From Phaeosaccion multiseriatum (taxonomy: Eukaryota; Protista; Ochrophyta, other classes), in the NCBI GenBank assembly GCA_965112735.1, contig OZ218954.1, positions 2,232,001 through 2,296,000 on the forward strand: a DNA stretch of 64,000 nt, written 5' to 3'. Of this stretch, positions 8,623 through 64,000 are shown in pieces. The first letter of the stretch is position 1. Every line of letters begins with the position of its first letter. The notes beneath the pieces are model-generated. The model was not told the DNA's origin, searched no databases, and saw nothing but the letters and a program-made list of their open reading frames with translations. A program made the translations under genes and the position numbers.

Positions 8623-14378
<5,756 letters not shown>

Positions 14379-19830: not shown

Positions 19831-26152
<6,322 letters not shown>

Positions 26153-47301: not shown

Positions 47302-50300
47302 ATGTCACCACCAGCCACAGGCCCAGCCTGCCGATTCTTTCCGCCATTGTTCTGCGCGGCGGCAGCAAGCATGTGTCTCCTCCTTCATGTCCTCAAGCCC
47401 TCATTGTTGGGGGTGTCAGCACAGACCCTCCTGCTCGTTGGGCTGCTGGTACTCGGGCTCCGCCTGCTGCTGCTGCTGCTGCTGCCTCCTCCTCGGTAAG
47501 CAAGTCCAGGAAGCTAGCTAGGCTAGTAAGAAGGGAGGGACGGAAGGGTGTCTTTCTTGACTTCTCAAGGCACGCTCGGAGTCGACTTCCAACCCAGCAA
47601 ACCCATCCTAAATGTTTCTCTCTCTCTCTCTCTCTCTCCCTTTGCTTATACTACTAGCGAGGCAACGGAGCGTACTTCTAGGAGGAAGAAGAAGAACAGA
47701 CGAGCAAGAAGGAGGAGGAGGAGACAGAGGACAGAAGAGGAGGAGGCGGAGAGGCTGGAGGAGGAACAGCAATTTCAAAGGAAGAAGAGGCAAGCCAGGG
47801 AAAATGACCTGGCAGAAAAGAGGAGAAAGGAGGTCAAGGAGGTCAAAGCATCCTCCCGGCGGCGTGAGCTACTCCGTGCTGTCGTGGGCAGTTGTGCGTA
47901 CAGAGACGCCCGGCGTGTGGACAATCACGCCAAGAGCACCACTCGTCGTCTCCTCAACGAGGAGATCAAGCGCCTCCAGCAGAACGACCCACACCTGTTT
48001 AGAAGCCTCTGGGTGGGACGACAGCCCCCCCAGAGGCTCGTTGACGTTATTCTCCGGCGCCTCGACCTGGCCATCGCCCGCAGTACTAGAGAAGAGCAGC
48101 AGCAGCAGCAGCAGCAGCAGGAAGCGGAGCAGGAGCGGCGCGGTTCGCCGGGTGGTGGCGGCAGCAGTAGCAGCAGTAGCAGCACCAGCACCAGCACCAG
48201 CAGCAGCGACAGCAGCAGCGACAGCAGCAGCGGCTTTGAGACAGAAGCTCCTCCTCCGCACAAGAGAAGGCGCTGGACGTGGCGACGTCAGCAGCGATGC
48301 CTGCCGAGGAGGATGGAGAAGAAGGAGCCGGAGCAGCAGCAAGAGCGGTGTTGGTGGGCGGGCGTGACGGGTTTCTTAGAAACCGTTCTCCTGTGGTGGC
48401 TGTGGGCCACACCAGACTTTTCACTGTTAGTCTCTTGCCCTTCTTGGTGGGGCTGCGGAGGGTTGGCCGTCTGGCTGCTCCACTCCATGATTGGACGGCA
48501 GCAACAACAACCAACAGGGGCCAGCAGCTCGTCTGGCCATCAGCCGCCGGGTGAGGGCCAGGGCCAGTGCCGGGACGCCAATGAGAGCCGGCGACGGCCC
48601 CGGGGTGTGAAGAGGCGGAGGCGGGATGGCCGGGAGAGAAGGAGGCGACGGGAAGAGCGAGAGAACAAGAAACGGGCACAACGGGTCTCCTCCTTTCCCA
48701 ACTTACTGGCACTGCTTACCACAATCCCACCATTGTTCCGGCGCACTCCACTCTACATACTAGCAGCTGGAGGTGGATGGTGTTCCTGGTACACCGCGCT
48801 TGCTAACCTCTGCCTACGGCTCTTGGCGGTGGTGAGTACGAAAGTGTGTGTGTGCGTGCGTGGGGGGGGAGGGGGGGGGGGGTGTGAAAGTGGGTTGTTG
48901 AAAGTCACTGCGAAAACCAGCCAGTGAGGGCTCATTAAATACCCATCTCATTGTATCCGGAAGCTGAACCCTACTGTATACCCCTCCACTCCACTGCCGC
49001 CCGCTGCTTCGCTGCCTCCAGCCGCCTTTTCTGAGTGGGGGCGTTTCCACGACACGGGAGCAAGGGGTCACGGCCACGACCAGCGGCCAGTGCCAGGACG
49101 ACCCTTGTGACGATGAGGGAGAGGGGGATGGGGGACGGAGGAGGAAGAGGAAGAGGAGGAGGGGGAGGGGGGGGAAGGGAAGGAAGGGGAGGAGGAGGAA
49201 GGGGAGGAGGAGGAGGACGAGGAGGAGGAGGAGGAGGAGGAGGAGGAAGGGGAAGGGGAAGAAGGAGAGCCAGGCGTGTGTCATGGCCGCTGTGCTGGGC
49301 CCAGAGCGCTGCCGAGGGCTATCGGCGAGGGAGGTGAGGGCCGAGGCCTGTCGGCAACTGCGGGCCAGTCTGCCCCAGAGGCGCCGTGAGATGGAGACCG
49401 TCGTCGGTGCTGGCTGTGTGGAGGCCTTCATCTGCGAGGTGGAGAAGCCCAACCGAAAGGGTGGGCGTCTCTTCCTTCGCCTTTGGGAAGCAGCGACGGG
49501 TGTGAGGTGCGTGGTCCTTTATCCCGGTGGGGATACAGGATCATACATGCCCACCGATTACTTCTCTCTGGAGAGGGCGAGAGAGGAGACCAGCTCCGAG
49601 GAGGACATTTTGTGGCTGGCCTTCGATGGCAACCATTACACCAGCATTCGGCGCCCAAACAGCATCATCAGCGCGGCCACCAGAGTCTTCCAGGGCCCCA
49701 TGCTGGGGGGTGGGAAGGCGCGCAGGAGAAGGAGGGCAGAGCAGGAGACACAGGAGGAGGCTTCTCTCGCGGTGAGTCAGTCTTTTTAAATTTGATTTCT
49801 TTTCTCTTAATTTTCTCTCCTCTCTCCACATCTCTCTCTTCTCACACCACCTCTCCCCCCCCCCTTTCTGCCTGCCTGTCTTTTTTTTTTTCCTTTTTTT
49901 TTTTTTTTTTTTCTTTCTCCCTCCCCAGGACAAGCAAGAACTGAATGCTGTGGATGCTGTCCACTGGGCGAGGATCTTCCCATCCCACCGATATGTGGCC
50001 ACTGCCAAGGAGGGAAATTGCTTCTTGTGGGCCCTTTGGCAGCAGTGCCTTCAGCATCTTCCGGACAGCGATAGACCTTCTAGGCCTATCCCGCTCGATG
50101 ACAAGGGCAAGCCAGTCATGTCTGTGTGGCGCCAGCAGCTGGCTCATGCGTATCTCAGCAGCGCTGGGGATCAGCGCGATCACAAGCCGGGTGAGCCACA
50201 GCCTGACCCTGTCACCCTCGGCACTTACGGAGAGTACCTTGGGGAGAATGAAATTCGTTGGCTTTGCGAATACTTTGCCATCAAGGTCACCTTGGTCACC

Positions 50301-52855
50301 GTCTATGAGAGTCTGGAAAAAGCACGCCCACGCATCCCCGAAGACGAACTTGTTTATGACGGACGACCAGAAGGCGAGCTGGACGAGGCAAGATCCTGCT
50401 GTATCGGCTTTTACTCGCATCATTTTATCGGCCTACAGCCGGTGGCAGAACAAGAGGGAGCTTTGGGTCCGCTACCTATGGAGGTCGATAGTGATGGCGG
50501 TGATGGTGGTGGTGGTGGTGGTGGTGGTGGTGGTGGTGGTGGTGGTGGTGGTGGTGGTGGTGGTGGTGGTGGTGGTGATGGTGATGGCGGTGATGGTGAA
50601 CGACGAGTGTATGGGATGAGGTCAGCGACAACCAAGAGACCCCGAAGAGGAGGGGGAGGAGGAGGGGGGGGATTCAATGGATACCGTCCTCCTCCTCCTC
50701 CTCCTCAGCTGAGGGAGTGGATCCTCCCAGCGGAGGCTTCGATGCGTAGTGGAGGAGCAGCAGCAGCAGCAGCAGCAGGAGGGGCAGCAGCAGCAGCAGC
50801 AGGGGGAGGGGGGGGAGCAGGAGGGGGAGCAGGAGGGGGGGGAGGAGGAGGAAGAGGAAGAGGAAGGGGAAGAGGAGGAGGAAGAGGAGGAGGGGGAGCA
50901 GGAGGAGGAGGAGGAGGAAGAGGAGGAGGGGGAGGAGGAGGAGGAGGAGCAGGAGGGGGAGCAGGAGGAGGAGGAGGAGGAGGAGGAGGAGGAGGAGGAG
51001 GAGGAGGAGGAAGAGGAGGAGGGGGAGGAGGAGGGGGAGCAGGAGGGGGAGCAGGAGGGGGAGCAGGAGGGGGAGCAGGAGGAGGAGGAGGAGGAGGAGG
51101 AGCAGGAGGAGACGATGACGAGGACAGGATAGCGGCGTGGAAGGTAAGGAGGATCGGAGAGGCTGGGCAGGAGTGGAGGCATGCGCACTTTTTTTTTTTG
51201 ATCCTAACGAGGCGCTCTCTCTCGCTCTCCCTCTCTCTCCATCTCTTTCTCCCTCCCTCCCTCCCTCCATCCATCCCTCCATCCCTCCATCCCTCCATCC
51301 CTCCATCCCTCCCTCCATCTGCCTCTCTCCCCTTTCTTTCTCTCCTTCTTCCTCCCCTCTCTCTGTCTCCTCTCTCTCTCTGAGGAGGAGGATGAGGAGG
51401 AGGATGAGGAGGAGGAGGAGGAGGAGGAGGAGGAGGAGGATGAGGATGAGGAGGGGGTGAGGACAGCGACGACATTTGCCGGAGGAGGAGGAGGAGGACG
51501 GGGTGGTGGTGGTGGTGGTGGTGGTGGTGGTGGGGAGAAGGACGAGGAGGAGGAGGAGGAGGAGGAGGAGGAGGAGGAGGAGGAGGGGGAGGAGGAGGAG
51601 GAGGAGGGGGCGGGGGGGGGAGGAGGAAGAGGTGGGCGAGCTTCTGGGAGGAGGTCAGTGACCCCACCCCCACGCCCCAGGAAGAGAGCCCGAGGAGGAG
51701 GAGGAGGAGGAGGAGGAGGAGGAGGAGGAGGAGCAGGAGGAGGAGGAGGCGGAGGCGGAGGCGGAGGAAGAGGTGGGCCTGACGAGGACTCTGACATTGG
51801 GGAGGAGGAGGAGGGGGGTACTACGGCGACGTGGAGTCCGAAGGTGAGGAGGAGTAAAGACGAGGCACGCAAGCTTGCTTCTGTTTCTTTCCCCCCGTCC
51901 CTGCCACGCCCATTGCTTGGTTATTTTTTTTTTGTTCTTACTTTGACCGCCCTTCTCGCTCTCCCCAACAACAGGGGCCCGCCAGCCGATCCACGAGGGC
52001 AAGGAAGCGCAAGGCTTCGTCCAGCGGCATTGGTAGCTCCTCTGAGCAGTATGGGGCAGCCCCTTGCGACGAAGAGTGCAAGAAAGGCAGGGGTCAGCAG
52101 GGCAGCAAGAAGGTGAGAGCTTCAAATGTCGCATGTTCAAGAACATTTTTCAAAGCGGAACGCGACGACCTGTGATTTTTGTGTATCACCAAACGCCCCT
52201 AACTCAGTCCTAACTCAGGATAACTCAGTCCTAACTCAGTTTTGCCACCTTCGGATGAGGCCATGACAAAAGCGGAGGCTAACTCAGTTTTGCCCCCCCA
52301 CTTACATCAGATTTGCCTCCCAACTAACTCAGATTGGACCCTTTTCCCAGCTTTGTAACTGCTTTACTTCTTCTAACCCCTTCCTCTCTCTCTCTCTCTC
52401 TATCTCTCCCCTCATTCTATCCTCTCTCCTCTGTTCTTCTTCTCTTTCCTCTCTCTCCCTCGTGCGTCTCTCTCAGGATGCGGCTGCTGCTCCTGCTGCG
52501 GCTGCTGCTGGTGCTGGTGCTGGTGCTGTTCGTGAAGGCAAATGCTCGCGCGGAAGGGTAAGTCCGACTTCGTCTCTTTCTCTCTCTGCCTCGCCTCGCT
52601 CTTCTCTCCACCCCTCTCTATTGCTCCATCACCTACCCTCTCTGCCTCTCTCTTTCCCCCCTGTGCTAATGGCTTAGGGGGCTCAACTAGCACTAGATCT
52701 GGAGTATTGGTCCCAGGCAATCCCTTCCCCTCTCCTCTCACCCCCGCGTGCCCTCGTCCCCTCTCCTGCCTCTCATGCCCTCTGCCTATATCCTCTCGCC
52801 TGTGGCACCTGCCTCATGGACGGCACCATCCTCATCATCATCATCATCACCATCC

Positions 52856-52915
<60 letters not shown>

Positions 52916-54075
52916 CCCAAACCAGGGTGTCGGCCGTACTGGTTCTCCTATGAGGAGCGATGTGCCACCCGGGACGCGCCAAGTGATCGTAAGTGGAAAC
53001 TTGAGCAATGAGCGATAAGAGTTGGGTGGGTGTGGAGTGATATTGTTGCTGGCTGGTGGAGTATCGACGTGCTATCGACCACATTCTCGATAGCATATAC
53101 TATCGGGCTCGTGCTATCAGTAGGTGCAGGTAGCAGATAGCATGTCAGGGAGCGCATCATGCACAGATGGCGCCGATATTCCCTTTTGTGCTTGCCTTGC
53201 TTCTTACAACCTCATTTACACCTTCCAACCTCACACAATGTGGCTGCGCAGAGTGAGGCAAAACAGCACGAACTTCAGCAGGGCGGAACGGAGGCGGACG
53301 AAGTCATTCTCGACCAGGGAGTGCGATGGCTTCGCGACGAGTTCCGCAACACCGACGGGGACAACACCCGCCAAATACTATTCCTCAACAACACCTTCAG
53401 TCTTGGCGCGAAGATGCAAGATGGCATGCAGCTGATGGAGAGTGCTGTTTGCGACGCCTCCTATGGGACCTTTTCGGCGATGTGGCCCTTCCAGGCCCAC
53501 AACGGCCATGCTCTCTCCCTCTTGGTGGTTTCGCGCGATGCGCACTTTTTTCTCGGCGTCATTGACCAACAAGGTCGCCGCATCATACTGCTTGAGACCC
53601 TCCGACCCACCCACGCCGAGCCAGTGGATAAAGCCGCCATTGAAAGCCAATATGATGAGGTGGGACGAGGATTGCGCGCTCAGGCTGAACGCGCCGGCGG
53701 AGGAAAGTGGACTCTGCAAATCCGCCATTCAGCTGTGGAGGACCCATCTCCACGTTGGGTGGAGCAGATCTTCCTCTCCCAAGACTGTCATGTCATGGTG
53801 TTGGAGGCAATGAGGCGTATAGCGGTGGCTTGGCGGGCCGGGCCAAGCCCCCCTGACATGGACGGGATGCTCGAAGAAGTGCGGGAAGCCATGGCTGGAG
53901 AGCTCAAGGGGTGTGACACCTGCTGGGCTGGTGGCCGGGAGACCTGGGCTGGTCGACTGCGCTGCCCGCCCAATGCCGAGGAGCAGCAAGGGGGGGGGGG
54001 GGGAGGCAAACGGCCTGCCGGGGGGGGAAAGGGCAGAATGGCGTCCACCAAGGCGAAAGGCAACAAGGTGAGCCC

Positions 54076-54123
<48 letters not shown>

Positions 54124-57100
54124 AGGAGATGACGAGTATCTGCCATCGAGTAGTGAGGAGGAGGGTGAGGAGGCGGACGCGGAGGAGAAGGAAGTGGGGC
54201 AGGGAGGAAAGAGAAGGAGCAGCAGGCTTGGGCTAAGGGCAGGTGGGCGGCAGCTGGCGGAACGGGTCAACCCCGCGGAGAGGGTGGAAGCAGCGTCTCC
54301 AGAAGATACCGACCCTCATGAGGGAGGAGGAAGAGGAGGAGAGGAGGAGGAGTGGATACCGGCGGGAGGCAGGAAGAAGAAGAAGACGAAGAAGAAGAAT
54401 AAGAAGAAGAGCAGGAACAGCAGCGCCGAGGCAGAGACGCAGCAACCGGCTTCTCAGGGAGGAGGAGGGGGGGGATTCAATGGATACCGTCCTCCTCCTC
54501 CTCCTCCTCAGCTGAGGGAGTGGATCCTCCCAGCGGAGGCTCCGACGCGTAGTGGAGGAGCAGCAGCAGCAGCAGCAGCAGGAGGGGCAGCAGCAGCAGC
54601 AGCAGGGGGAGGGGGGGGAGCAGGAGGGGGAGCAGGAGGGGGGGGAGGAGGAGGAAGAGGAAGAGGAAGGGGAAGAGGAGGAGGAAGAGGGGGAGCAGGA
54701 GGAGGAGGAGGAGGAAGAGGAGGAGGGGGAGGAGGAGGAGGAGGAGGAGGAGGAGGAGGAGGAGGAGGAGGAGGAGCAGGAGGAGACGATGACGAGGACA
54801 GGATAGCGGCGTGGAAGGTAAGGAGGATCGGAGAGGCTGGGCAGGAGTGGAGGCATGCGCACCTTTTTTTTTTTATCCTAACGAGGCGCTCTCTCTCGCT
54901 CTCCCTCTCTCTCCATCTCTTTCTCCCTCCCTCCCTCCATCCATCCCTCCATCCCTCCATCTCTCCATCCCTCCATCCCTCCCTCCATCTGCCTCTCTCC
55001 CCTTTCTTTCTCTCCTTCTTCCTCCCCTCTCTCTGTCTCCTCTCTCTCTCTGAGGAGGAGGATTATGAGGAGGAGGAGGAGGAGGAGGAGGAGGAGGAGG
55101 AGGATGAGGATGAGGATGAGGATGAGGAGGGGGTGAGGACAGCGACGACATTTGCCGGAGGAGGAGGTGGTGATGGAGCTTGTGTGAGGACAAGGTCAGC
55201 GACCGCCGCCCTACGTACACGCGTATCATCAGGGCGGGCGGGGACGAAAGAAGGCCCGGCAAGAGAGAGTGGTACGAGGACTGCCACAAAGGCCAAGGCA
55301 GGGACGGGGCCTGCGGGGCGAGGGAAAGGAAAGGTGAGCAATGCCGTTGATGCTACTCCCACGGTTGCACGGAAATTTTCCTACTGACACAGTAGTTATC
55401 CTATACCATCTCTCTGTTGCAGGCCAAGGACGGTGGGGGCAAGCCGCTTTACCAGCTCTTCACCCAATCGTGTGAGGGGAAGGCCATGTTGAAGGAGGCC
55501 GAGGCAGAGAACAAGGGGAGCTCCAGATACTGGAGGAAGAACTGCTTCCGCAAATGGTTGCAGAGAGAGGGGGGGGCAGAAGGGGCAGAATCGGACACCG
55601 TGAAGGCCAAGCACAAGGAATGGCAACGAGCGGTGGACCAGAAGGCGCGGCAGAAGGAGGAGGTGAGAAATCGAATGTGTACTTCGAAGTACGTTCTTTC
55701 CCCCCCACAACTGACAAATGACGATCCGGATTCCAACACGCCAAGCACCCCCTCGCTCACCCTTTGGCCGCCTCCCTCTCCGCTCCTATTGTCTTCTTGT
55801 CGTATCTTCTTGTCATAGAGGGCCGCAGAGAAGGCTGAGGGGCAAAAGGCTGGCGTTCGGTCAGCTATAAAGGCGCTTAGTCCTTTCTTCCCCGGCGCGT
55901 TCTCGACAAGGCCGAGGAAGCGCAGTCGAGCCAAGGCGAGAACGCGAGCGACGACGACACGGCCACATGATGTGCGTCAGACCTATGCCCGGCTGGAGGT
56001 AGACCAGCGTTGCCTGTCTGTGCTCTTGACCCCTCTGTACCACAAGGTCAAGAAGTTTGCTCACCAACACTCTGAGTTTCTGGGCCAGGGGAGCGGCATG
56101 CTCCTTATTCCGGAGTGCCGATCGACCAAGGCGGCAGAAGTGAGGCTACGAATTGTCCTGGTCGGCGAGATGAAGACTGGAGACGACGGAAAGTGTGTGA
56201 CTCTCTCTGATTTTGAGGCACCTGGGGGCAACGATCGAGTCGAGTCGTTCACCATGCTCGGTGAGGAGGAGGGCAAGGAGATGGCCGACGCCCTCTGGGA
56301 GGGCCTGGGCGGGGGGGTGGATACAGACAAGCGCAAGTGCATTGCCCTTATGAGAGGCAGGCACAACAATCTGCTGTTCGAGGTGCTCGTGGTGCCCAAC
56401 AGCGCTGTGGATGCCTGGTGTGCGGCCGACCTACCCCCGCCTCAGGAGCAGCAGCCGCAGCAGCAGCAGCAGCAGGAGCCGCCGCAGCAGCAGCAGCAGC
56501 AGCAGCAGAGAGAGAAGAACAAGAGCAAGAAGCGCGGGGGGCCGACGCTGCTTTCGAGGCCTGACGTGTCCGCGCCTGAGCAGCAGCAGGAGCAGCAGCA
56601 GGAGCAGGAGCAGGAGCAGCAGCAGCAGCAGCAGCAGGAGCAGCAGCAGGAGGAGGGCGGGGGGCGGGAACTGCGTCCGACGGTGCTGGATGAGAAGGTT
56701 CCGTGGAAGGACGGTGTGGTGGATCTGTCCAGGCGTGTGTATTCTGAGGCTGTGAAGGCGAAGGAACCGGGGCAGAACCACAGTGCCATAGCAGCGGGGG
56801 CCTACAACGTCACCAGAGAGGAGTGGCTTGTGGCAAGACGGAGTGGACCGGCCAGAGCTGATGTGTCCAGCTGTTTGCACGGAGTCACTGTAGGTGCTCA
56901 TGCCGAGCCGGAGCTACTCGAGTGCATTGAGAAGCGGCACGGGTGGACTGGTGAGGATGAGCTCATACTGGTCATCTCGACCCTCCCCTGCATCGGTTGT
57001 GCCCGGCTACTGGCAGAGCGGAAGAGACAAGGACGCCTGAACTGCAGCGTCATCTTCGTTGGCGACTCCCGCCCTGTCCTGGGGGAGGGGAGGAGCATCC

Positions 57101-58504
57101 TCACGGACGCTGGCCTTGAGGTGAGCATTTGATTTGAGCGAAGGGCACGGCTGGAACAGGGGCATATGGGCAGGCAGGCAGGCAGGCAGGCATATGGGCA
57201 GGCATATGGGCAGGCAGGCAGAGAGGCATATGGGCAGGCAGAGAGGGAGGCAGGCAGGCAGGCAGGCAGGCAGGCATATGGGCAGGCATATGGGCAGGCA
57301 GGCAGGCATATGGGCAGGCAGGCAGACACGACGGAGCCGATGCAGAATCCACACCTTACCTTTTCTTCAACCTTCTTCTCGCTTGGCATGGTCAGGTCAA
57401 AGAGGATAGCCTCTTCTGCTCCAACCTGCTTCCGCGCTTGAGGAGGGTCAAGGTGGTGCTCGAGAACAAGCACGTGTTAGCCACTTTCGCGGGGGGTCAA
57501 GGTCACTGGCGAACGTGGCATAACACCACTCTTATTGTCCTGGTGGAGCCGACGGCGGAGGGAGACAAGCAAGACCTGCTGCTTCGGTGCCTCCTCCTCA
57601 AGCTTGCCGCCGACCCATGGCGTTATTTGCGCCAGACTAGGAGACCTATGCAGCTCGCGGCGCATCGTCGGGCTTGCGCGGCTCGCGAGGACTGCAAGGA
57701 GGGCAAAGGGAAGGTGTCCATGTTGGCTGTTGGGAAAGACGTGTTGGCTCTTCGGGAGGGGATGCACATTCCAGACGTGTGTGCCCGTGCCTGGGCGAAG
57801 GAGTCGATGCCCCTGTGTCGCGATGGTGCCGAAGTCTCGGGCTTCAAGCCGGTCGTCCTGACGGCGGAGAAGCCCGAGAAATGGAAGCACTACGGCCAGC
57901 GCCTCAAGTTGAATGTGCCCTTCCCTAGCGACCGTGTCTCGGGGGCTGGTGTGGAGCGGAATGATGCCATTATGGCATCAACGCAAGTGAGGGAGGACAG
58001 GCAGAAGAACAAGCTACGAAGGCGCGAGAGGGCGGCGCAGCAGAATCGGCGGGTGATGCAGCAATTCCGCTCCAACATGTATAGTTTCCTCCCGACAGGG
58101 GATGATGATGGTGAGGCCGGCGCCACAGTGTTGCGAAACGCTCGGCTTGCCCCTATGCGGATGGCCGAGGAGAACAAGAGGAAGGAGGAAGCGGCAGCTG
58201 CTGCAGCAGCAAAGAGGAAGAAGGAAGCGGCAGCAAAGAGGAAGACAGGTGGAAAGGCGAAGGAGAAGAAGAGCAGAAGTACAATATCTGTGATTGTCCA
58301 GCAGCAGCCAGCGCTGTTGAGTGTGCTGAGGGGAGGAGCTGCGAGTCGAGGGGTGGCACAGAGTGCCTTCAACGACATGGCTTTGCTGAAGGATCTGGTC
58401 GCGTGCGTTCCTCGCTTCCTCCTGGACAATGGGATGCTACAACACCGAGAGGACACCACCATCCAGGGGGAGGTTTTTGATGCTCAAGGGAGGGCCAAGG
58501 AGCC

Positions 58505-58583
<79 letters not shown>

Positions 58584-61500
58584 GGCGGCAGCTGCTGGTC
58601 GGAGCTGTGCAAACTCTGGGGGCACTTTAGTGCTAAGCTCGAGCCGTGGTGGGGCGTGGGGAATGAAATCTCATTCACGGCTGAGGACTCGGCTGAGGAG
58701 GCGCAGCAAGTCTTCACGTTGATCAAGCAGTTGATGCGGATGGATCCCTACCTCATTGTGTCAATGGTCAAATCGGGGGGCAGCTCCAACCGTGCCTCCT
58801 TTCTGGCCGGGGCTAAGAGACTTGAAGCACTCTTGGGGCTCTGGCGCGATGACGAGTTGGAGGGTCTGCGCCTGCCCCGCAAGTTTAGCCTGGAGTCACC
58901 ACAGACCTACGGGGGCGCGAAGAAGCGATTCAACGCGTGCTTGGGGGTGTTGGTGAAGCTTGGCGCGACAAGTGAGGCATGCCAAGGCGTGCTTGGCGTT
59001 TGGGCGGCGCAGGGGGTGACTGGCCATGAGAAGGAGCGGTTGCCCAGGCCTCCGTCCAAGACGGAGAAGAAGAAAAACCGCCAGGCCAAGAAGAAGCGGG
59101 AGGAGGAAGAGGGGTGGCAGGAGAGGAAGGAGGACACGGCGAGGATGCGCGGGGGAAGCTCGCAAGCAAGCGCTGATGTCAGTGCCAAGAGGACGCGGGT
59201 GTCGAAGCAGCTAGGGGGAAAGGGGGGGGGGGGGTGGACGGCCTCTCTTTCGTGGCATACCGACGATAGCCTTGACACGCAGCTGAGGAGCCTCATGGCG
59301 CCGCTCCTGTTACAGGAGAGGTATCGAGGGCATGAGGAGGCGGCGGTGGAGGAGGCCAAGTTGCTGCTGCAGTCTGCAAAGGCGGAGAAGATTCCCTGGA
59401 TGACCGTCTACGGGAGCGGGGGGTCGGAGACAAGGGGACGACCGCCCCCTATCCGCGAGCAGGCTCATGTAGCTTTTGCGGCCAATCTTTACTCCTTCAT
59501 CACGCAAGGGAGACGAGGACGCTGCGTGCTGGTGAGTGGCTGAGTGGGAGGGGAGGGGAAAGGGAGGAGAGAGGGAGCCCACGCTCTGGTATATCACCAG
59601 GGACAGATGAGGCCTAAAATGGAATACCCCCCTCCAAATGTCGACGATGGTCCGAATTCCAACATGTGTGCCACGGCTCTTCTTGTACCTGCTGCATCTG
59701 ACGCTGCCAACTCACACGCCTTTGCCTGCCCCTCTTCTCAGATGCAAAAGGGCTTTCTAGATGAGTTGGCCCTCTACATGTCGAGAGCCGAGTTTGTGCC
59801 CTCCCTCACGTACAAATACGCCGGCTCCAAGGAAGGGCCCACCACGGCAGAGGAGTTCCGAGGACGGCAGGCTGGACGGCAGCTCCCAAGTCCTTTGACT
59901 CTTCTCGGGGATGTCAAGGCACAGGTCAAGAAGCTCAGCGTCGTCCGACGACGACCTGTCGCGGAAGAGATTGCCATTCTCGCTGTGGAGGCTCACAAGG
60001 CAGTCCACGGCCCGGAGGGCCAAGATAACTACCGTGAGACCTACCAGCACATGGCGGCCTCTGGGGCCCTAACATACGCCCAATCAGCGGAGTATGAGAC
60101 AGACGATCAGCGGAAGCTTGTGCTGGACGCTGCAACAACTGCTGGTTTTATGGCAGCGAGAGGAGGGGAGGAAGCAAAGCAGGTGCTGGAAGCTGCGCGC
60201 GGGCTCGTGAAGTGGTGCGTCGATCTGGGGAGGGGGTCGGGAGGGGAGCCACTGAGGAAGAGCCGGGGCCTCCAGAGCATTCTGTTGAGCAGAAGGCTCA
60301 GGAGCAGCAGGAGAGAGTTCAGAGCGCATACTCCACTCTTGCCAGGCAGGACAGTTGGCAGGGGCTGACGAGCGGCCCGGTGTTTGAGGCCCGCCTTGCC
60401 GCTCTTGTCGTCACACAACATGTCGGAGAGACTACACTCGCCAACACAGAGACTACACTCAGCTACGTGTATGGCGGCGACAAGTGCAGGGCAAAGGCTG
60501 CGGCGGAGATCCTTACCATGGCTCTACAGCATGCCGAGCTTGGCACTGAGCAAGCGTCTGTGGACACAATCAAAGAGCGTTGTCTCCAGCCTCCGTCGAG
60601 GCGCTTTCTCACCCCATCCGTTAACAGGCAGATCGACGCGATGCAGACACACGTTGGGGTTGGGCGATTCCGTGGGGAGCGCGGCGCAGTGGAGCGTGGG
60701 GAGAGGCAGGTGCATAGCACCGAATACTTCAAGGCAGGGTGTTGTGGGCACCTCAACCCGGGCGAGTTTGGGCTGCAGTACCGGAACTTTGGGGTGACCG
60801 TTGGAGGGGGTGAAGCCATCCTCGTCAATAACGGAGCCCGATGGATCGAGAGGGTGACCGTGTGCGTCACGGCGGGGCACACTCTGACCCTGTTCGACCA
60901 GACAGGGAAGCCCTCGCGGCGCCTTTGGCGGGAGCCAGCCCACCAGGCGGATGGGGGGACGTCGGTGCAGCCAGCGTGGCTTTGTGTGACGGGGCCCGTT
61001 CTAGGGGACTGCGCCCATGGTACATCGCTCCATCTCCAGTTTGAGGAACCCCAACGAGCTGTTCCGCACATGGAAGTGCATGGGGGGGAGAGGGGGGAGA
61101 AGGAGGAGTTGGAGCAGTACTGCAAGCTCCGCCGTGAGAGGCCTGGGGGAGCGGGTGGGGGTGGGAGAGGGGGGGAGGGAGGGGTGGGGGAGGGGGGGAG
61201 CGAGGGAGGGAGCGAGGGAGGGAGCGAGGGAGCGAGGGAGGGAGAGAGAGAGGGAGAGAGAGAGGGAGAGAGGGAGGGAGGGAGGGAGGGAGGGAGGGAG
61301 AGAGGGAGGAAGAGAGGGAGGGAGGGAGGGAGGGAGGGAGGGAGGGAGAGAGGGAGGAAGAGAGGGAGGGAGCGAGGGAGGGAGGGAGCGAGGGAGCGAG
61401 GGAGCGAGGGAGGGAGGGGGCGAGGGAGCGAGGGAGGGAGGGAGGGAGGGAGCGAGGGAGGGAGGGGGCGAGGGAGCGAGGGAGGGAGGGAGGAAGGGGC

Positions 61501-61912
61501 TGACGACGCGGGCCGGATGGAGGAGTTGGTAGAGTTGCGTTATAGAGCCAAGCTAGGTGGGAGAGGGGGGGAGGGAGGGGTGGGGGAGGGGGGGAGCGAG
61601 GGAGGGAGCGAGGGAGGGAGCGAGGGAGCGAGGGAGGGAGAGAGAGAGGGAGAGAGAGAGGGAGAGAGGGAGGGAGGGAGGGAGGGAGGGAGAGAGGGAG
61701 GAAGAGAGGGAGGGAGGGAGGGAGGGAGGGAGGGAGGGAGGGAGAGAGGGAGGAAGAGAGGGAGGGAGCGAGGGAGGGAGGGAGCGAGGGAGCGAGGGAG
61801 CGAGGGAGCGAGGGAGCGAGGGAGCGAGGGAGGATGTTGTGATATGATCATTATTGGGGTCTGTGGGATGCCCAATATTGATAACGTCCACACTTGGGAT
61901 CTTCAACTCTGA
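47302..61912 (+). CDS. Giant multidomain protein (~3,700-3,900 aa): hydrophobic N-terminal segments, OTU-like x2, Ulp1/C48-like protease, possible HMG-like segment, Zn-dependent deaminase, long unknown C-terminus
   Basis: Hand-spliced GT-AG exons 47302-47495, 47658-48831, 49022-49771, 49929-51143, 51385-51843, 51975-52112, 52477-52557, 52926-52988, 53252-54817, 55055-55333, 55423-55662, 55819-57120, 57396-59531, 59601-60214, 60346-61912 keep one open frame (11,778 nt). Start and 3' end uncertain. Confidence 0.7.
49064..49650 (+). other. OTU-like cysteine protease domain 1 (divergent)
   Basis: Candidate Cys box VTATTSGQCQ (Cys 49091) and His box LWLAFDGNHYTSI (His 49634), with a basic low-complexity insert between them. 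Confidence 0.55.
49985..50440 (+). other. OTU-like cysteine protease domain 2
   Basis: VATAKEGNCFLWAL (Cys 50019), GEYLGENEIRWLCEYFAIKVTLV, CIGFYSHHFIGL (His ~50421). Confidence 0.75.
52200..52332 (+). repeat. Six direct copies of TAACTCAG in a less GC-rich intronic patch
   Basis: Copies at 52200, 52211, 52221, 52232, 52280, 52325. Confidence 0.9.
53252..53830 (+). other. Ulp1/SENP-like (C48, clan CE) peptidase domain
   Basis: HFFLGVID..IILLETL (His 53543, Glu 53594) ... EQIFLSQDCHVMVL (Gln 53765, Cys 53786): His-acid-Cys order and spacing of clan CE. Confidence 0.7.
56720..57120 (+). other. Zn-dependent cytidine/dCMP-deaminase-fold domain
   Basis: GAHAEPELL (His 56899, Glu 56905) ... LVISTLPCIGCARLL (Cys 56989, 56998) ... 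VIFVGD..GRSILTDAGLEV. Confidence 0.85.
57160..57325. repeat. GGCA/GGCATATG compound repeat in an intron; the same unit occurs in the cyanase intron at ~7240-7290
   Basis: Directly visible. Confidence 0.85.
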
Positions 61913-62600
61913 GGCTCTGGGCCTCGTACTACGTTTATGGTTCTGTTAAAGGGCAATATATATTAGTTGACACACACAACAGCTTACGTATCATAGTGCG
62001 GGAGGGACATCGCAACACGACAATTGTCGCGAACATCTTCACAGCTAGCTGGTTCCGCAATTTAATTGTTCAGCGGCAGAAAACGAAGTGAGTGTAAATC
62101 AACAGGAGACGTAGTGCTGTCTTGCGGTACCCATGCCTGGGGGGCATGCTAGCGGGACAGAGCAGGACGGGGATGGGGACGATGCGTTCCCTGATATCTC
62201 TAGTCCAGGAGTAGGTGGAGGGGATCCACCTTCTCAACAAGACATGTTTATGCTAATGCAGCAGCAGCAGCAGCAGATAGCAAACCTGACCAACTTATTG
62301 GCCAAATTAGACACAGGATCAGCAGCGGGAAGCTCTGTTGTGTCAGGGGCAGGAGGCCCCGGAGGTGCGTCAAGCAGTGGCGGCACCATAGCGGGAGGGG
62401 GAGGCAGCACGGGGGGCAGCAGCGGTAGCAGCAGCTCTCTGATTTGTTTGAGCTACAAGTCAAAGGTGCAAACCTTCTCTTCCGAGCTGAAAGAAGGAAC
62501 AGTTGTAGAGACAGCCGTTCCTGACAGGACAGCCGTTCCTGACAATGAAAGCGAATCGGAGCGGCAGTTAGCTGCTTACGCGAAAGAACTATTGATGACC
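61835..62600 (+). mobile_element. Putative LTR retroelement 5' end: 147-bp LTR-like segment plus gag-like ORF start
   Basis: Abrupt switch from GGGA repeats to AT-richer DNA. TGTTGTG(61835)...CACAACA(61981) inverted termini. ORF from 62133 with MQQQQQQIANLTNLL, a gag-like N-terminus. No clear PBS or pol seen. Confidence 0.45.
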
Positions 62601-63216
62601 GGTTTTGGTGGGGCGAGATGCCCCACTCGGTGAAAGTGGGTATTTTTAGTACCCAATTTTTTTAAAAGTGGGTATTTTTAGTACAGTACCCAATATGGAC
62701 CAGTAGCGCCCCTCCCCCCCCCCCTCCTTTTTGGTGTATCTCTCCCCTCCTCCTCCAAAATATACTACGCTATGATATGACGATTTAATGGTATTACCAC
62801 GATAACAATGGTATTCATATTTACAGACACACTTAGTGTCCGTCCTCAATCATGCATGGCATACAGTAGTAGTCAAAATCGCCTTCCGCAAAACCCTTGC
62901 TGTCGCAAAACTCGACGGTGCACATGTGGTGCACGAGGTTTCCACACGCTCTTTCGGATGGGCAGAGGAACAGCTTGACTTGCGAGGGCTTAGTACAGCC
63001 ATACGAGCATGTGAAGGCCATGTCTCCCTCTCTCAAGCCGCCCAACGACGGCGCTGCTGACGCGGCAGCAGCGGCAGTAGCGGCCGCAGCGGCCGCATCA
63101 GAGGCAGCAGCAGAAGCAGCATCAGAAGCAGTACCAGTACCAGTACGCTGTTTTTTTGGGCCCCCCTTCCCCCACCCCTTCCTCCTCGTCCTCCTCCGGC
63201 TCCGCCTCCTCCTGTT

Positions 63217-63250
<34 letters not shown>

Positions 63251-64000
63251 TGCTGCTGCCACCTCCCTCCTCGTCGTCCTCTGCACCGCTATCACCTCCA
63301 TCCCCCTCCTTCGACTCGTCTGCACCAGTGCCACTTTCCTTCGCCCTCGCCCGCTTCGCCCGTTTTTTCGCGTCCGCCTGCTGCGCGCTCCATAAATTAT
63401 ACACGGTGGTCCACACCAGCTGATTGAAGCGGCGCTTGTGAGAATCAGAACGAGACTTGATGTCAAAGGCGTCTTTGACTGCGTCAAACATGCTTCGCGC
63501 TTCTTCAAGCGTCGGCTTGTCCTTCCAGAGCCCCTTTTCTTTCGCCGCGGATTCAATCGCACCCATCAAACAGCAAAATTTTGACATCCTTCGCTTCTCC
63601 GCCCTCCCCTGCACGTCTGCTGTCGTGAATTCTCGAAGGCGAGGAGTGCCTGTCATCCAAGCATCCCAAGCAGCGCGCACAGTGAAGCTAGGGACCTCAA
63701 AGTGCTCGGGAAGGGTATGCCACCGGCCGTTGTAGAGATACAGAGGTGGCTGATCTGCACCTGCACAAGAAGAAGAAGAGGGCGGGGCGCTGCTCGAACC
63801 CTCACCAAGGCCCAGAGTGCCTGCCTGGTGAGCCGCGAGAAGGTCGCTGAGCCCACTCTTAGAAAAGGCTGCGTCGAGGGTCGTCTGCAGGGCCCTGCTC
63901 ACACCCAGACTGGTGACAGTGCCAGAGGCCTGTGCATTCTCCTCCAGAACGTCACGGATCAGCGTCTCCAAGTCGACCTTGATCGTCTGGCCCAACACCT
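62595..64000 (-). mobile_element. 3' end of a Crypton-like (tyrosine-recombinase) DNA transposon
   Basis: Intronless ORF 63998-63033 with YNGRWHTLPEHFEVPSFTVRAAWDAWMTGTPRLR..KRRMSKF..LM..RRFNQLVWTTVYN, resembling by eye the GCR1_C-like C-terminus of stramenopile Crypton proteins. Subterminal hairpins and repeats at 62607-62700. The YR core would lie beyond the window. Confidence 0.6.

What the first reader, a model, noticed from the sequence alone, without database searches (positions are those of the whole stretch)
47302..61912. Giant spliced gene combining two OTU-like deubiquitinases, a Ulp1-like deSUMOylase and a Zn deaminase inside a transposon-rich island
Seen: 15 GT-AG exons splice into one open frame of ~3,900 codons, which the ORF track shows only as unrelated pieces. 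Catalytic-looking residues are present for OTU2 (GNC..HF), OTU1 (GQC..HY), a clan-CE protease (H..E..Q..C) and a deaminase (HAE..PCxxC), plus NLS-like basic runs and hydrophobic N-terminal segments. Established: OTU and Ulp1 domains are recurrent cargo of eukaryotic DNA transposons (Helitron, MULE, Zisupton) and of viruses, where they counter Ub/SUMO-based control. Inference: I know no host protein with this architecture. It may be the anti-silencing or effector polyprotein of a large mobile element, or a conflict protein coupling Ub/SUMO removal to nucleic-acid or nucleotide deamination. This is the best candidate for an undescribed system here.
Basis: partly seen in the sequence, partly recalled or inferred. 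Interest (0 to 1): 0.92.

Follow-up and report, generated by a model that had tools for sequence, protein, structure and literature searches.

The report
Giant algal protease-deaminase gene, largely unverified
A real, intron-rich gene (or gene pair) in an alga related to brown algae encodes a huge orphan protein; it probably carries a zinc deaminase and has motifs resembling three ubiquitin/SUMO-type proteases, but only the deaminase got any profile support and nothing suggests a transposon.

Summary
I rebuilt a 13-exon, 12-intron GT-AG chain (47302-61912, + strand) that reads as one open frame of 3,877 codons. The exons show coding periodicity. The splice signals and intron sizes match a homology-validated neighbour gene (UNC-50). 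All cited motifs are present at the stated places.

The domain calls are only partly supported.
- Deaminase block (56722-57120): sub-threshold hits to five cytidine-deaminase (CDA) superfamily Pfam models (best E=6.5e-4, 20 bits against a 25-bit cutoff), plus HAE...PCxxC.
- The two OTU-like blocks and the Ulp1-like block: no Pfam, NCBIfam, PHROGs, PADLOC or PDB hit and no homologue in any search. Single-sequence AlphaFold models were unusable (pLDDT 38-40). They rest on motifs alone.

The transposon or mobile-element reading is not supported. Neighbours are ordinary host genes. I found no transposase, reverse transcriptase or integrase, no terminal repeats, no paralogues in the window and no viral relatives.

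About 38% of the protein is low complexity, and the last ~260 codons are microsatellite. Intron 6 (1,139 bp) is weak, so two genes (OTU-like; Ulp1-like plus deaminase) remain possible.

The host is an ochrophyte alga near the brown/yellow-green algal clade, and its proteome is not in the databases. Verdict: a real orphan gene with a possibly new architecture; moderate interest.

The parts
47302..47495 (+). Exon 1 (tentative start ATG; hydrophobic, partly poly-Leu N-terminus)
   Evidence: ATG at 47302 and donor TCG|GTAAGC at 47496. Hydropathy peak at residues 10-65. The start codon is an inference.
47658..48831 (+). Exon 2: basic, low-complexity and hydrophobic stretches, no recognisable domain
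   Evidence: Acceptor ...TACTACTAG| and donor GTG|GTGAGT at 48832, at a codon boundary. Periodicity is clear only for 47.7-48.3 kb. Pfam gives only low-complexity hits.
49022..49771 (+). Exon 3: GGA-rich low-complexity tract, then the OTU1-like block (SQACVMAAVL 49268-49297 ... DGNHYTSI 49625-49648)
   Evidence: Acceptor CTGCCTCCAG| and donor GCG|GTGAGT. Motif coordinates. No Pfam, NCBIfam or PDB hit. Not significantly similar to OTU2.
49929..51143 (+). Exon 4: OTU2-like block (EGNCFLWAL 50010-50036, LGENEIRWL 50238-50264, SHHFIGL 50415-50435), then a Gly/Ala-rich tract
   Evidence: 157-bp intron with 100% pyrimidine tract before CAG. Composite Cys+His pattern has 0 matches in about 115 kb of control DNA in six frames and in 2,000 shuffles. 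No profile, PDB or homologue hit. AlphaFold pLDDT 37.9.
50654..51494 (+). Copy 1 of an internal ~0.8 kb direct repeat (end of exon 4, intron 4, start of exon 5)
   Evidence: blastn 91-95% identity to 54457-55170.
51385..51843 (+). Exon 5: Glu/Gly-rich low complexity
   Evidence: Acceptor with 95% pyrimidine tract, in frame; donor AAG|GTGAGG.
51975..52112 (+). Exon 6: small basic exon (possibly the last coding exon of a separate upstream gene)
   Evidence: Acceptor ...CCCCAACAACAG| and donor AAG|GTGAGA. Read-through reaches a stop at 52173.
53252..54817 (+). Exon 7: Ulp1/clan-CE-like block (VRWLRDEF 53321-53344; NGHALSLLVV 53501-53530; AHFFLGVIDQ 53540-53569; IILLETL 53582-53602; EQIFLSQDCHVMVLE 53762-53806), then low complexity
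   Evidence: Strong periodicity at 53.1-53.7 kb. H..D/E..Q..C pattern unique in the controls. No Pfam, PDB or NCBIfam hit. 0 hits in 1.84 billion proteins. AlphaFold pLDDT 39.6. Clan-CE-like chains (SdeA DUB, RavZ, SENP5) appear only at probability <=0.14. Alternative start ATG at 53159.
54457..55170 (+). Copy 2 of the internal ~0.8 kb direct repeat (end of exon 7, intron 7, start of exon 8)
   Evidence: blastn 91-95% identity to 50654-51494.
55055..55333 (+). Exon 8: acidic, then Gly/Arg/Thr-rich
   Evidence: Acceptor identical to that of exon 5 (95% pyrimidine); donor AAG|GTGAGC at a codon boundary.
55423..55662 (+). Exon 9: charged, helical-looking segment
   Evidence: 89-bp intron ending CTCTCTGTTGCAG|; donor GAG|GTGAGA. 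Periodicity.
55819..57120 (+). Exon 10: orphan N-terminal part, poly-Gln linker, then the CDA-fold deaminase domain (56722-57120; HAE 56893-56913, PCxxC 56983-57003)
   Evidence: Pfam: dCMP_cyt_deam_1 E=6.5e-4 (20.0 bits, cutoff 25; profile positions 6-92 of 102), SNAD4 3.4e-3, APOBEC2, APOBEC_N and MafB19-deam at 0.09-0.21. HAE...PCxxC pattern unique in the controls. No PDB phmmer hit.
57396..59531 (+). Exon 11: 712-aa orphan region with a poly-Gln tract
   Evidence: Strongest coding periodicity in the locus. 276-bp intron GAG|GTGAGC ... GGTCAG| in phase 0. No homologue, Pfam, PDB, viral or metagenome hit.
59601..60214 (+). Exon 12: orphan
   Evidence: The in-frame stop at 59541-59543 lies inside CTG|GTGAGTGGCTGAGT. 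Proposed 69-bp intron, which is short for this genome.
60346..61134 (+). Exon 13, credible part: orphan, beta-strand-looking block (about 60725-61051)
   Evidence: Frame-1 periodicity at 60.3-60.9 kb. Best intron is 60215 GTGCGT ... CTCTTGCCAG 60345, among about 100 frame-keeping GT-AG pairs. No Pfam or PDB hit.
61135..61912 (+). Exon 13, doubtful tail: (GGGA)n-type microsatellite that happens to stay open up to TGA at 61910-61912
   Evidence: Tandem 8/12-nt repeats. No periodicity. A strong donor GCC|GTGAGA sits at 61134.

Best explanation
This is a host nuclear, intron-containing gene of an ochrophyte alga. It is most likely one transcription unit of 13 exons (about 11.6 kb of coding sequence), or at most two adjacent units. 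It encodes a lineage-specific giant protein that is about 38% low complexity.

The one enzymatic module I consider established as likely is a zinc-dependent CDA-fold deaminase of the dCMP/TadA-like (nucleotide or tRNA) type at 56722-57120. Three further blocks carry the Cys/His signatures of papain-like ubiquitin/Ubl proteases. OTU2-like is the most convincing, Ulp1/clan-CE-like is next, and OTU1-like is the weakest.

Inferred mechanism, not shown: a large scaffold that removes ubiquitin or SUMO-type modifiers through its thiol-protease modules and deaminates a cytosine or adenine base in a nucleotide or nucleic acid through the HAE/PCxxC site. The roughly 1,400 orphan residues downstream would give targeting. 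An internal 0.8 kb duplication shows that the gene has been remodelled recently. It is not detectably part of a transposon or a virus.
For: - Gene reality: coding periodicity in the correct frame and strand for every non-repetitive exon.
- A 12-intron chain gives one 3,877-codon frame.
- Donors are GTRAGN or GTGCGT. Nine of 12 acceptors have at least 70% pyrimidine, against 2.5% of all AGs in the locus.
- The signal types, and most intron lengths, match the homology-validated UNC-50 introns in the same window.
- Deaminase: five CDA-superfamily Pfam models hit the same block, the best at E=6.5e-4 and covering profile positions 6-92 of 102. The HAE and PCxxC motifs lie 27 residues apart.
- Protease-like blocks: the composite motifs occur once each in the locus, 0 times in about 115 kb of control DNA in six frames, and in <=0.05% of residue shuffles.
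- Host, not mobile: flanking Kelch-BTB, cyanate lyase, PI3/PI4K, B9, UTP25 and UNC-50 genes. GC content resembles the flanks. No TIR or LTR, no dispersed repeats, no paralogues, no viral relatives.
- Host taxon from UNC-50: 65-68% identity to Phaeothamnion, Discosporangium, Ectocarpus, Chrysoparadoxa and Tribonema.
Against: - No OTU or C48 profile hit at any threshold.
- No PDB sequence hit for any block, including the deaminase.
- No homologue anywhere, so no alignment, no conservation evidence and no usable structure model.
- All deaminase hits are below Pfam's gathering score.
- The motif patterns were written from memory of family consensus after I had seen the sequence, so their rarity overstates significance.
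- OTU1 and OTU2 are not detectably similar to each other.
- The Trp that normally follows the catalytic His in Ulp1/SENP enzymes is absent (HA or HF here).
- No transcript evidence. Intron 6 is about four times longer than the next longest, and intron 11 is only 69 bp.
Confidence: 0.5

Rival explanations
1. There are two adjacent host genes rather than one giant gene. Gene A (about 47.3-52.2 kb) would carry the OTU1-like and OTU2-like blocks and end at the stop at 52173. Gene B would start at ATG 53159 and carry the Ulp1-like block, the deaminase and the orphan C-terminal region. The shared 0.8 kb module would reflect a partial tandem duplication or gene conversion between neighbours.
For: Intron 6 would be 1,139 bp, against 69-276 bp for the other eleven, and its acceptor tract is only 50% pyrimidine. 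GC and periodicity collapse at 52.05-52.35 kb, as in intergenic DNA. Read-through of exon 6 stops after 20 codons. ATG 53159 opens the 742-aa ORF just after an in-frame stop. The same 0.8 kb module follows both OTU2 and the Ulp1-like block.
Against: Exon 6 ends in a strong consensus donor (AAG|GTGAGA) at a codon boundary, and an in-phase CAG acceptor exists at 53251. An intron of about 570 bp occurs in UNC-50, so long introns exist in this genome.
Confidence: 0.35
2. One reading: the protein is the anti-silencing or effector polyprotein of a large mobile element (DNA transposon or integrated giant virus), with OTU, Ulp1 and deaminase as cargo.
For: OTU and Ulp1 domains are documented in Ginger1, Mutator-like and Helitron transposon proteins (PMC2836005). 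OTU-like protease, Ulp1 protease and cytidine/dCMP deaminase occur as separate genes in giant-virus insertions of brown algae, relatives of this host (PMC11890097). The gene is an orphan, which fits fast-evolving conflict genes.
Against: No transposase, integrase, reverse transcriptase, helicase or capsid-type Pfam hit in the locus or in any of the 30-odd ORFs scanned across the window. No TIR or LTR; the inverted repeats are complementary microsatellites. No dispersed repeat or second copy in 64 kb. Nothing in 2.9 million viral contigs. The locus has 12 host-type spliceosomal introns and host-like GC. It is flanked by housekeeping genes.
Confidence: 0.1
3. Only the deaminase is real. The OTU-like and Ulp1-like motifs are chance resemblances inside an orphan, largely disordered protein, or are inactive relics.
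For: Zero profile, PDB or homologue support for the three protease-like blocks. OTU1 and OTU2 show no similarity to each other. The acidic residue two positions after the catalytic His, seen in many OTUs (established knowledge, recalled and not tested), and the Trp after the Ulp1 His are both missing (read). The patterns were chosen post hoc.
Against: Each composite pattern is rare. In my reading of the translations against recalled family consensus, the OTU2-like and Ulp1-like blocks match several spaced motifs in the right order and spacing. For OTU2 these are the Cys helix, the G.NEI..L motif and the His strand. For the Ulp1-like block they are WL.DE, F.NN.F, P....H..L..V, D/E, and Q..DC. 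Clan-CE chains appear among the top 50 Foldseek hits of a poor model (a hint only).
Confidence: 0.25
4. The locus is a decaying pseudogene or an assembly-compromised region. The in-frame stop at 59541 and the frame change at about 60.2 kb would be lesions, not introns.
For: Introns 11 (69 bp) and 12 (131 bp) have the weakest acceptors (59% pyrimidine), and the 69-bp intron is shorter than any validated intron in the window. The frame change lies in a G-rich stretch. Microsatellites are abundant.
Against: The stop sits exactly inside a consensus donor (CTG|GTGAGT) at a codon boundary, with an in-phase CAG 69 bp downstream. Periodicity continues on both sides. More than 11 kb remains open otherwise.
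Confidence: 0.1

Closest known systems
CDA-superfamily zinc deaminases (Pfam dCMP_cyt_deam_1; dCMP deaminase / TadA-like 'helix-4' group in the classification of Iyer et al. 2011, PMC3239186)
   Same: HAE and PCxxC zinc and catalytic motifs lie 27 residues apart. The profile match runs from helix 1 to just past PCxxC. After PCxxC comes a helix, then a hydrophobic strand, then a '...L.DAGLEV' ending, which is typical of dCMP/TadA-type enzymes (my reading; established knowledge).
   Different: Scores are below every family's cutoff and there is no PDB or NCBIfam hit. The domain sits inside a ~3,900-aa protein instead of a ~150-190-aa enzyme. It matches none of the stramenopile-specific deaminase clades that have Pfam models, such as LmjF36.5940-like.
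OTU deubiquitinases (Pfam PF02338)
   Same: OTU2-like block: acid-G-N-C-aromatic/aliphatic-x-A-L at a predicted helix start, a central G.NEI..L motif, and a C-terminal hydrophobic strand with H-F. The Cys-His spacing of about 130 residues is like that of OTU domains (consensus from established knowledge).
   Different: No PF02338 hit even at E<=10. Glu replaces the usual Asp before the Cys. There is no acidic or amide residue two positions after the His. OTU1 is weaker still, with either a non-canonical 'SQAC' or a 'GQC' followed by low complexity.
Ulp1/SENP (MEROPS C48, clan CE) deSUMOylases
   Same: The order His ... Asp/Glu ... Gln ... Cys is present, with His-Asp 19 residues apart and Gln-Cys 2 or 7 apart. 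The Cys lies in a 'DC' dipeptide at a helix start. Upstream 'WL.DE' and 'F.NN.F' motifs are present (consensus recalled, not tested).
   Different: No PF02902 hit, and zero hits in 1.84 billion proteins. The substrate-clamping Trp after the His is absent. The identities of the catalytic His and acid are ambiguous (H at 53507 or 53543; D at 53564 or E at 53594).
Transposon-borne OTU/Ulp1 proteins (Ginger1, Mutator-like KI-MULEs, some Helitrons; PMC2836005)
   Same: They carry the same kinds of protease domain, as accessory modules of large proteins that evolve fast.
   Different: In those elements the protease is fused to or adjacent to a transposase, within TIR-bounded multicopy units. Here there is no transposase, no TIRs and no second copy, and there are 12 host-type introns.
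Bacterial multi-domain effectors and polymorphic toxins that combine deubiquitinases with other enzymatic heads (for example CifB-type proteins with Ulp1/OTU modules, PMC11342252; deaminase 'polytoxins' with papain-like peptidases, PMC3239186)
   Same: One very long polypeptide strings several conflict-type enzyme domains together (DUB, Ulp1-like, deaminase).
   Different: Those are prokaryotic, intron-less, secreted and linked to immunity genes or mobile islands. This one is a spliced eukaryotic nuclear gene, and no sequence similarity to them was detected.

Membership tests
CDA-superfamily deaminase | [H/C]AE in helix 2 and PCxxC in helix 3, about 25-35 residues apart (zinc ligands plus catalytic Glu) | tested here: met
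   GAHAEPE at 56893-56913 and LPCIGCA at 56983-57003, with 27 residues between HAE and PC. The pattern is unique in the locus and absent from the controls.
CDA-superfamily deaminase | Profile match at or above the family gathering score | tested here: inconclusive
   dCMP_cyt_deam_1 gives 20.0 bits against a 25-bit cutoff (E=6.5e-4). SNAD4, APOBEC2, APOBEC_N and MafB19-deam are also sub-threshold. NCBIfam, PADLOC and PDB phmmer give nothing.
CDA-superfamily deaminase | Three-layer alpha/beta/alpha deaminase fold | not tested
OTU deubiquitinase (PF02338) | Catalytic Cys in a D/E-G-N-C-hydrophobic motif at a helix N-terminus, plus a C-terminal His in an H-[YF] strand about 100-170 residues later | tested here: met
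   OTU2: EGNCFLWAL (50010-50036) and SHHFIGL (50415-50435). OTU1: SQACVMAAVL or SGQC, and DGNHYTSI. This is motif level only, the consensus is recalled from established knowledge, and OTU1 is non-canonical.
OTU deubiquitinase (PF02338) | Profile match to the OTU family | tested here: not met
   No hit at E<=10 for 49929-50510, 49950-50510, 49250-49771 or 49283-49700. No PDB OTU hit.
OTU deubiquitinase (PF02338) | Papain-like alpha+beta fold superposable on OTU structures | tested here: inconclusive
   The AlphaFold single-sequence model has pLDDT 37.9. The Foldseek result is meaningless.
Ulp1/SENP peptidase C48 (clan CE) | His-Asp-Cys triad with an oxyanion Gln, in the order H..D..Q..C | tested here: met
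   H (53507 or 53543), D (53564) or E (53594), Q (53765 or 53780), C (53786). The pattern is unique in the controls. Motif level only.
Ulp1/SENP peptidase C48 (clan CE) | Conserved Trp after the catalytic His (H-W) that forms the Gly-Gly tunnel | tested here: not met
   The sequence reads H-A (NGHALS) or H-F (AHFFLG).
Ulp1/SENP peptidase C48 (clan CE) | Profile or homologue match to C48 proteins | tested here: not met
   No PF02902 hit. 0 of 1.84 billion representatives at E<=1e-3. No PDB hit.
Ulp1/SENP peptidase C48 (clan CE) | Clan-CE fold | tested here: inconclusive
   The model has pLDDT 39.6. SdeA DUB, RavZ and SENP5 chains appear in the top 50 Foldseek hits, but at probability <=0.14 and E>1.
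Cargo of a DNA transposon (Ginger1 / MULE / Helitron / Zisupton type) | Transposase, Rep-helicase or integrase in the same unit | tested here: not met
   No such Pfam family in any exon block or neighbouring ORF.
Cargo of a DNA transposon (Ginger1 / MULE / Helitron / Zisupton type) | Terminal inverted or direct repeats bounding the unit | tested here: not met
   The only long inverted pairs are (CCCT)n against (AGGG)n microsatellites. The only direct repeat is internal.
Cargo of a DNA transposon (Ginger1 / MULE / Helitron / Zisupton type) | Multiple copies in the genome | not testable with these tools
   Only 64 kb of the genome is available. There is no second copy within it, and the source genome is not in the searchable collections.
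Integrated giant-virus (Nucleocytoviricota) element | Viral hallmark genes nearby, viral relatives of the ORFs, and a compositional break | tested here: not met
   No hallmark Pfam hits. Four scans of viral contigs were negative. GC is 0.58-0.64, against 0.55-0.62 in the flanks. Spliceosomal introns are present.

The most novel reading that the evidence does not exclude
One ~3,900-residue algal nuclear protein really does unite two active OTU deubiquitinases, a clan-CE Ulp1-like protease and an active nucleotide or nucleic-acid deaminase. That would make it a eukaryotic, host-encoded counterpart of bacterial polyvalent effectors. It would couple removal of ubiquitin/SUMO marks to base deamination, for example in antiviral or anti-transposon genome defence, in a lineage that is heavily colonised by integrating giant viruses.
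Probability: 0.2. Interest if true: 0.75.

Novelty: new variant of a known kind. Interest (0 to 1): 0.42.

Why it matters
If the four enzymatic modules are real and sit on one polypeptide, this would be an undescribed eukaryotic architecture linking ubiquitin/SUMO deconjugation with base deamination. Both activities recur in host-parasite conflict.

The host belongs to a group of algae (relatives of brown algae) whose genomes are known to take up giant-virus DNA. That virus DNA carries OTU, Ulp1 and deaminase genes as separate genes. The locus could therefore be a case of host capture and fusion of conflict enzymes, or an independent invention.

As it stands, it mainly shows how far a motif-only call can be taken. 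The gene is real and the deaminase is likely. The protease calls and every functional statement still need transcript, profile-profile or biochemical evidence.

Tried and rejected
**Searches that returned nothing**
- Homologue searches: the 701-aa ORF and the OTU2 block at E<=10 found nothing. An exhaustive phmmer of the Ulp1-like block against 1.84 billion representatives gave 0 hits. So no alignment could be built for any block.
- Related loci: four viral-contig scans and one metagenome scan found nothing.
- Profile libraries: NCBIfam, PHROGs and PADLOC gave nothing relevant.
- PDB phmmer on seven blocks gave nothing relevant.
- Rfam and tRNA scans of the window were empty.

**Tests that gave unusable or non-significant results**
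- Single-sequence AlphaFold of the OTU2-like and Ulp1-like blocks gave pLDDT 37.9 and 39.6, which is unusable. Foldseek against the PDB on those models gave no match at E<0.001.
- Internal paralogy: OTU1 against OTU2 by Smith-Waterman with shuffles gave z=0.9, not significant. MAFFT of the two does not align the motifs, so I did not use it as a profile.
- Synteny walk from UNC-50 into Tribonema, Chrysoparadoxa and Ectocarpus contigs: the neighbours differ, and tblastn of all blocks is at noise level.

**Ideas rejected**
- A transposon-type structure. There are no TIR/LTR, no dispersed repeats and no window-wide copies of the CTAACTCAG motif found in intron 6.
No GT-AG intron joins GQC to the downstream helix-like VMAAVL.

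**Not attempted**
- Building OTU/C48 profiles from remembered sequences, which would be unreliable.

Full report
**What the window is**

The 64 kb window is eukaryotic, about 58% GC and extremely rich in tri- and tetranucleotide microsatellites. ORFs outside the finding carry ordinary host domains:
- Kelch/BTB (435-1403)
- cyanate lyase (7030-7890, minus strand)
- PI3/PI4-kinase (12466-13386)
- ciliary B9 (23396-26152)
- UTP25 (28719-31748, minus strand)
- UNC-50 (39741-40271, minus strand)

The UNC-50 exon is 65-68% identical to proteins of Phaeothamnion, Discosporangium, Ectocarpus, Chrysoparadoxa and Tribonema, and nothing is closer. The source is therefore an ochrophyte alga near the brown/yellow-green algal clade, and its own proteome is not in the searchable databases. 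This matters for reading the blanks below. No search could find the gene's own annotated product or close orthologues.

Yes, in substance. Stop-to-stop ORFs on the + strand between 47.5 and 61.1 kb all show the coding-type GC pattern (second codon position lowest, third highest) in their own frame. The order of phases fits the + strand.

I chained the ORFs using consensus splice sites. The resulting model has 13 exons: 47302-47495, 47658-48831, 49022-49771, 49929-51143, 51385-51843, 51975-52112, 53252-54817, 55055-55333, 55423-55662, 55819-57120, 57396-59531, 59601-60214 and 60346-61912. It totals 11,634 nt, or 3,877 codons, with one stop at the very end.

A bare GT-AG path means little. At one junction alone about 100 GT-AG pairs keep the frame open. 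What counts is signal quality:
- All 12 donors are GT[AG]AGN or GTGCGT.
- Six of the donors lie within 60 nt of the read-through stop.
- Nine of 12 acceptors have at least 70% pyrimidine in positions -25 to -4, which is true of only 2.5% of the 1,649 AG dinucleotides in the locus.
- The four UNC-50 introns, located by homology, have donors of the same kind (GTGGGT, GTCAGT, GTGAGT), polypyrimidine-CAG/TAG acceptors, and gaps of 166-573 bp between aligned blocks. My introns are 69-276 bp, plus one of 1,139 bp.

I conclude that a multi-exon + strand gene is well supported.

Whether it is one transcript is not settled:
- Intron 6 (52113-53251) is four times longer than any other, has a mediocre acceptor, and spans a stretch whose GC and periodicity look intergenic.
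- Exon 6 read through reaches a stop after 20 codons, and ATG 53159 could start a second gene.
- Introns 11 (69 bp) and 12 (131 bp) are also weak.
- The last ~775 nt (61135-61909) are (GGGA)n-type microsatellite without periodicity. The true C-terminus probably lies near 61.1 kb, where a strong donor sits at 61134.
- About 38% of the conceptual protein is low complexity.

**The motifs**

- OTU2-like: EGNCFLWAL, then LGENEIRWL, then SHHFIGL.
- OTU1-like: SGQC, then DGNHYTSI. The GQC runs straight into an acidic/basic GGA-repeat tract, and no GT-AG intron joins it to a helix-like continuation. SQACVMAAVL at 49268-49297 is the more plausible Cys helix.
- Ulp1-like: VRWLRDEF, ILFLNNTF, NGHALSLLVV, AHFFLGVIDQ, IILLETL and EQIFLSQDCHVMVLE.
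- Deaminase: GAHAEPE, then LPCIGCA after 27 residues, then a C-terminal '...LTDAGLE'.

I wrote relaxed patterns for each family from recalled consensus. Each composite pattern matches once in the locus. None matches about 115 kb of control DNA translated in six frames. Each matches at most 0.05% of 2,000 residue shuffles of the protein. The patterns were written after I had seen the sequence, so this shows rarity, not membership.

**Family tests**

The deaminase block hits five CDA-superfamily Pfam models at the same place:
- dCMP_cyt_deam_1: E=6.5e-4, 20.0 bits against a 25-bit cutoff, profile positions 6-92 of 102
- SNAD4: E=3.4e-3
- APOBEC2, APOBEC_N and MafB19-deam: E=0.09-0.21

All are sub-threshold but coherent. 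Together with the motif geometry, I take the deaminase as likely (about 0.8). It looks like the dCMP/TadA type in the classification of PMC3239186.

The three protease-like blocks have no support beyond the motifs:
- No Pfam hit at E<=10, nothing in NCBIfam, PHROGs or PADLOC, and nothing in PDB phmmer.
- No homologue for OTU2 at E<=10.
- Zero hits for the Ulp1-like block in an exhaustive scan of 1.84 billion representatives. At that database size E<=1e-3 needs a high bit score (roughly 45 bits by my estimate), so remote kin would be missed.
- Without homologues there was no alignment. AlphaFold ran on single sequences and gave pLDDT 37.9 and 39.6, and Foldseek found nothing at E<0.001.
- Clan-CE-like chains (SdeA DUB, RavZ, SENP5) appear among the top 50 hits for the Ulp1-like model. 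This is only a hint.
- OTU1 and OTU2 are not significantly similar to each other.
- The Trp after the Ulp1 catalytic His is missing.

My estimates that each block is a true member of the fold are OTU2 about 0.6, Ulp1-like about 0.5 and OTU1 about 0.35.

**Mobile element or virus?**

It is established that OTU and Ulp1 domains ride on Ginger1, Mutator-like and Helitron elements (PMC2836005). Brown-algal giant-virus insertions carry OTU-like protease, Ulp1 protease and cytidine/dCMP deaminase as separate genes (PMC11890097). Here, however:
- There is no transposase, integrase, reverse transcriptase, helicase or capsid domain in the locus or in any of the 30-odd ORFs scanned.
- The only long inverted repeats are complementary microsatellites.
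- There are no dispersed repeats and no second copy in the window.
- Four scans of viral contigs and one metagenome scan were empty.
- GC content matches the flanks.
- The gene has a dozen host-type introns.
- Synteny walks from UNC-50 in three related genomes found neither conserved neighbours nor any relative of the blocks.

The 'transposon-rich island' and 'polyprotein of a mobile element' readings are therefore unsupported. An old capture of viral or transposon genes by the host cannot be excluded.

**Internal duplication**

A ~0.8 kb segment at 50654-51494 recurs at 54457-55170 with 91-95% identity. Each copy comprises three parts:
- the end of a coding exon (...GGFNGYRPPPPPPQLREWILPAEA..., a Gly/Ala tract, ...DDDEDRIAAWK)
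- a 237-241 bp CT-rich intron with identical splice sites
- the start of the next, acidic exon, up to ...GVRTATTFAGGGGG

One copy follows OTU2 and the other follows the Ulp1-like block. This indicates recent unequal recombination or gene conversion within the gene, or between two adjacent genes.

**Best explanation**

This is a host nuclear gene, most likely one unit and possibly two. It encodes a lineage-specific giant protein that is largely low complexity. It has a probable dCMP/TadA-type zinc deaminase and up to three papain-like ubiquitin/Ubl-protease-like modules, followed by about 1,400 orphan residues.

The mechanism (Ub/SUMO deconjugation coupled to base deamination on a common scaffold) is inference from motifs. 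Nothing about activity, substrate or expression is shown.

The architecture resembles bacterial multi-domain effectors that string DUBs and deaminases together (PMC11342252, PMC3239186). There is no detectable sequence relationship to them.

**Verdict**

The deaminase is likely, the proteases are unconfirmed, and the mobile-element context is not supported.
- Interest is moderate (0.42).
- If real, the architecture would be a new variant of known kinds of domain combination.
- Transcript data, and alignments from the source genome and its relatives, would settle most of the open points.

Noticed in passing
window 50654-51494 and 54457-55170: A ~0.8 kb direct repeat (91-95% identical) lies inside the locus. 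Each copy spans the end of an exon, a whole 237-241 bp intron and the start of the next exon. One copy follows the OTU2-like block and the other follows the Ulp1-like block, which points to recent internal duplication or gene conversion.
   Followed up: partly
window 52170-52300 (intron 6): There is a cluster of CTAACTCAG units, including two exact copies of CTAACTCAGTTTTGCC 48 bp apart. The motif occurs nowhere else in the window (0.01 expected by chance). Its function is unknown.
   Followed up: partly
window about 52830-52930 (intron 6): A long (CAC/CAT)n tract would encode more than 30 consecutive His in one frame. It lies outside any exon of my model.
   Followed up: no
window 57140-57330 and 61135-61850: A (GGCA)n/(GGCATATG)n microsatellite fills intron 10. 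An ~0.7 kb (GGGA)n-type array stays open in frame and inflates the predicted C-terminus.
   Followed up: partly
window 20000-24000: GC skew is extreme here (-0.41 to -0.47), with overlapping long ORFs on both strands caused by C-rich low complexity. The stretch lies just upstream of the B9-domain gene.
   Followed up: no
window 38426-40393 (- strand): A complete-looking five-exon UNC-50 gene, with gaps of about 166, 180, 265 and 573 bp between the aligned exon blocks. I used it as the internal reference for this genome's splice signals.
   Followed up: yes
window 62133-62633 (+) and 62833-63998 (-): Just downstream of the locus are a Gln/Gly/Ser-rich + strand ORF starting at ATG 62133 and, on the minus strand, a Cys/His-rich ORF (zinc-finger-like spacing) followed by a 321-aa ORF that runs off the window. 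None has a significant Pfam hit.
   Followed up: partly
window 7030-7890 (- strand): An exon with a cyanate lyase C-terminal domain (E=5e-15). It helped place the source among algae.
   Followed up: no
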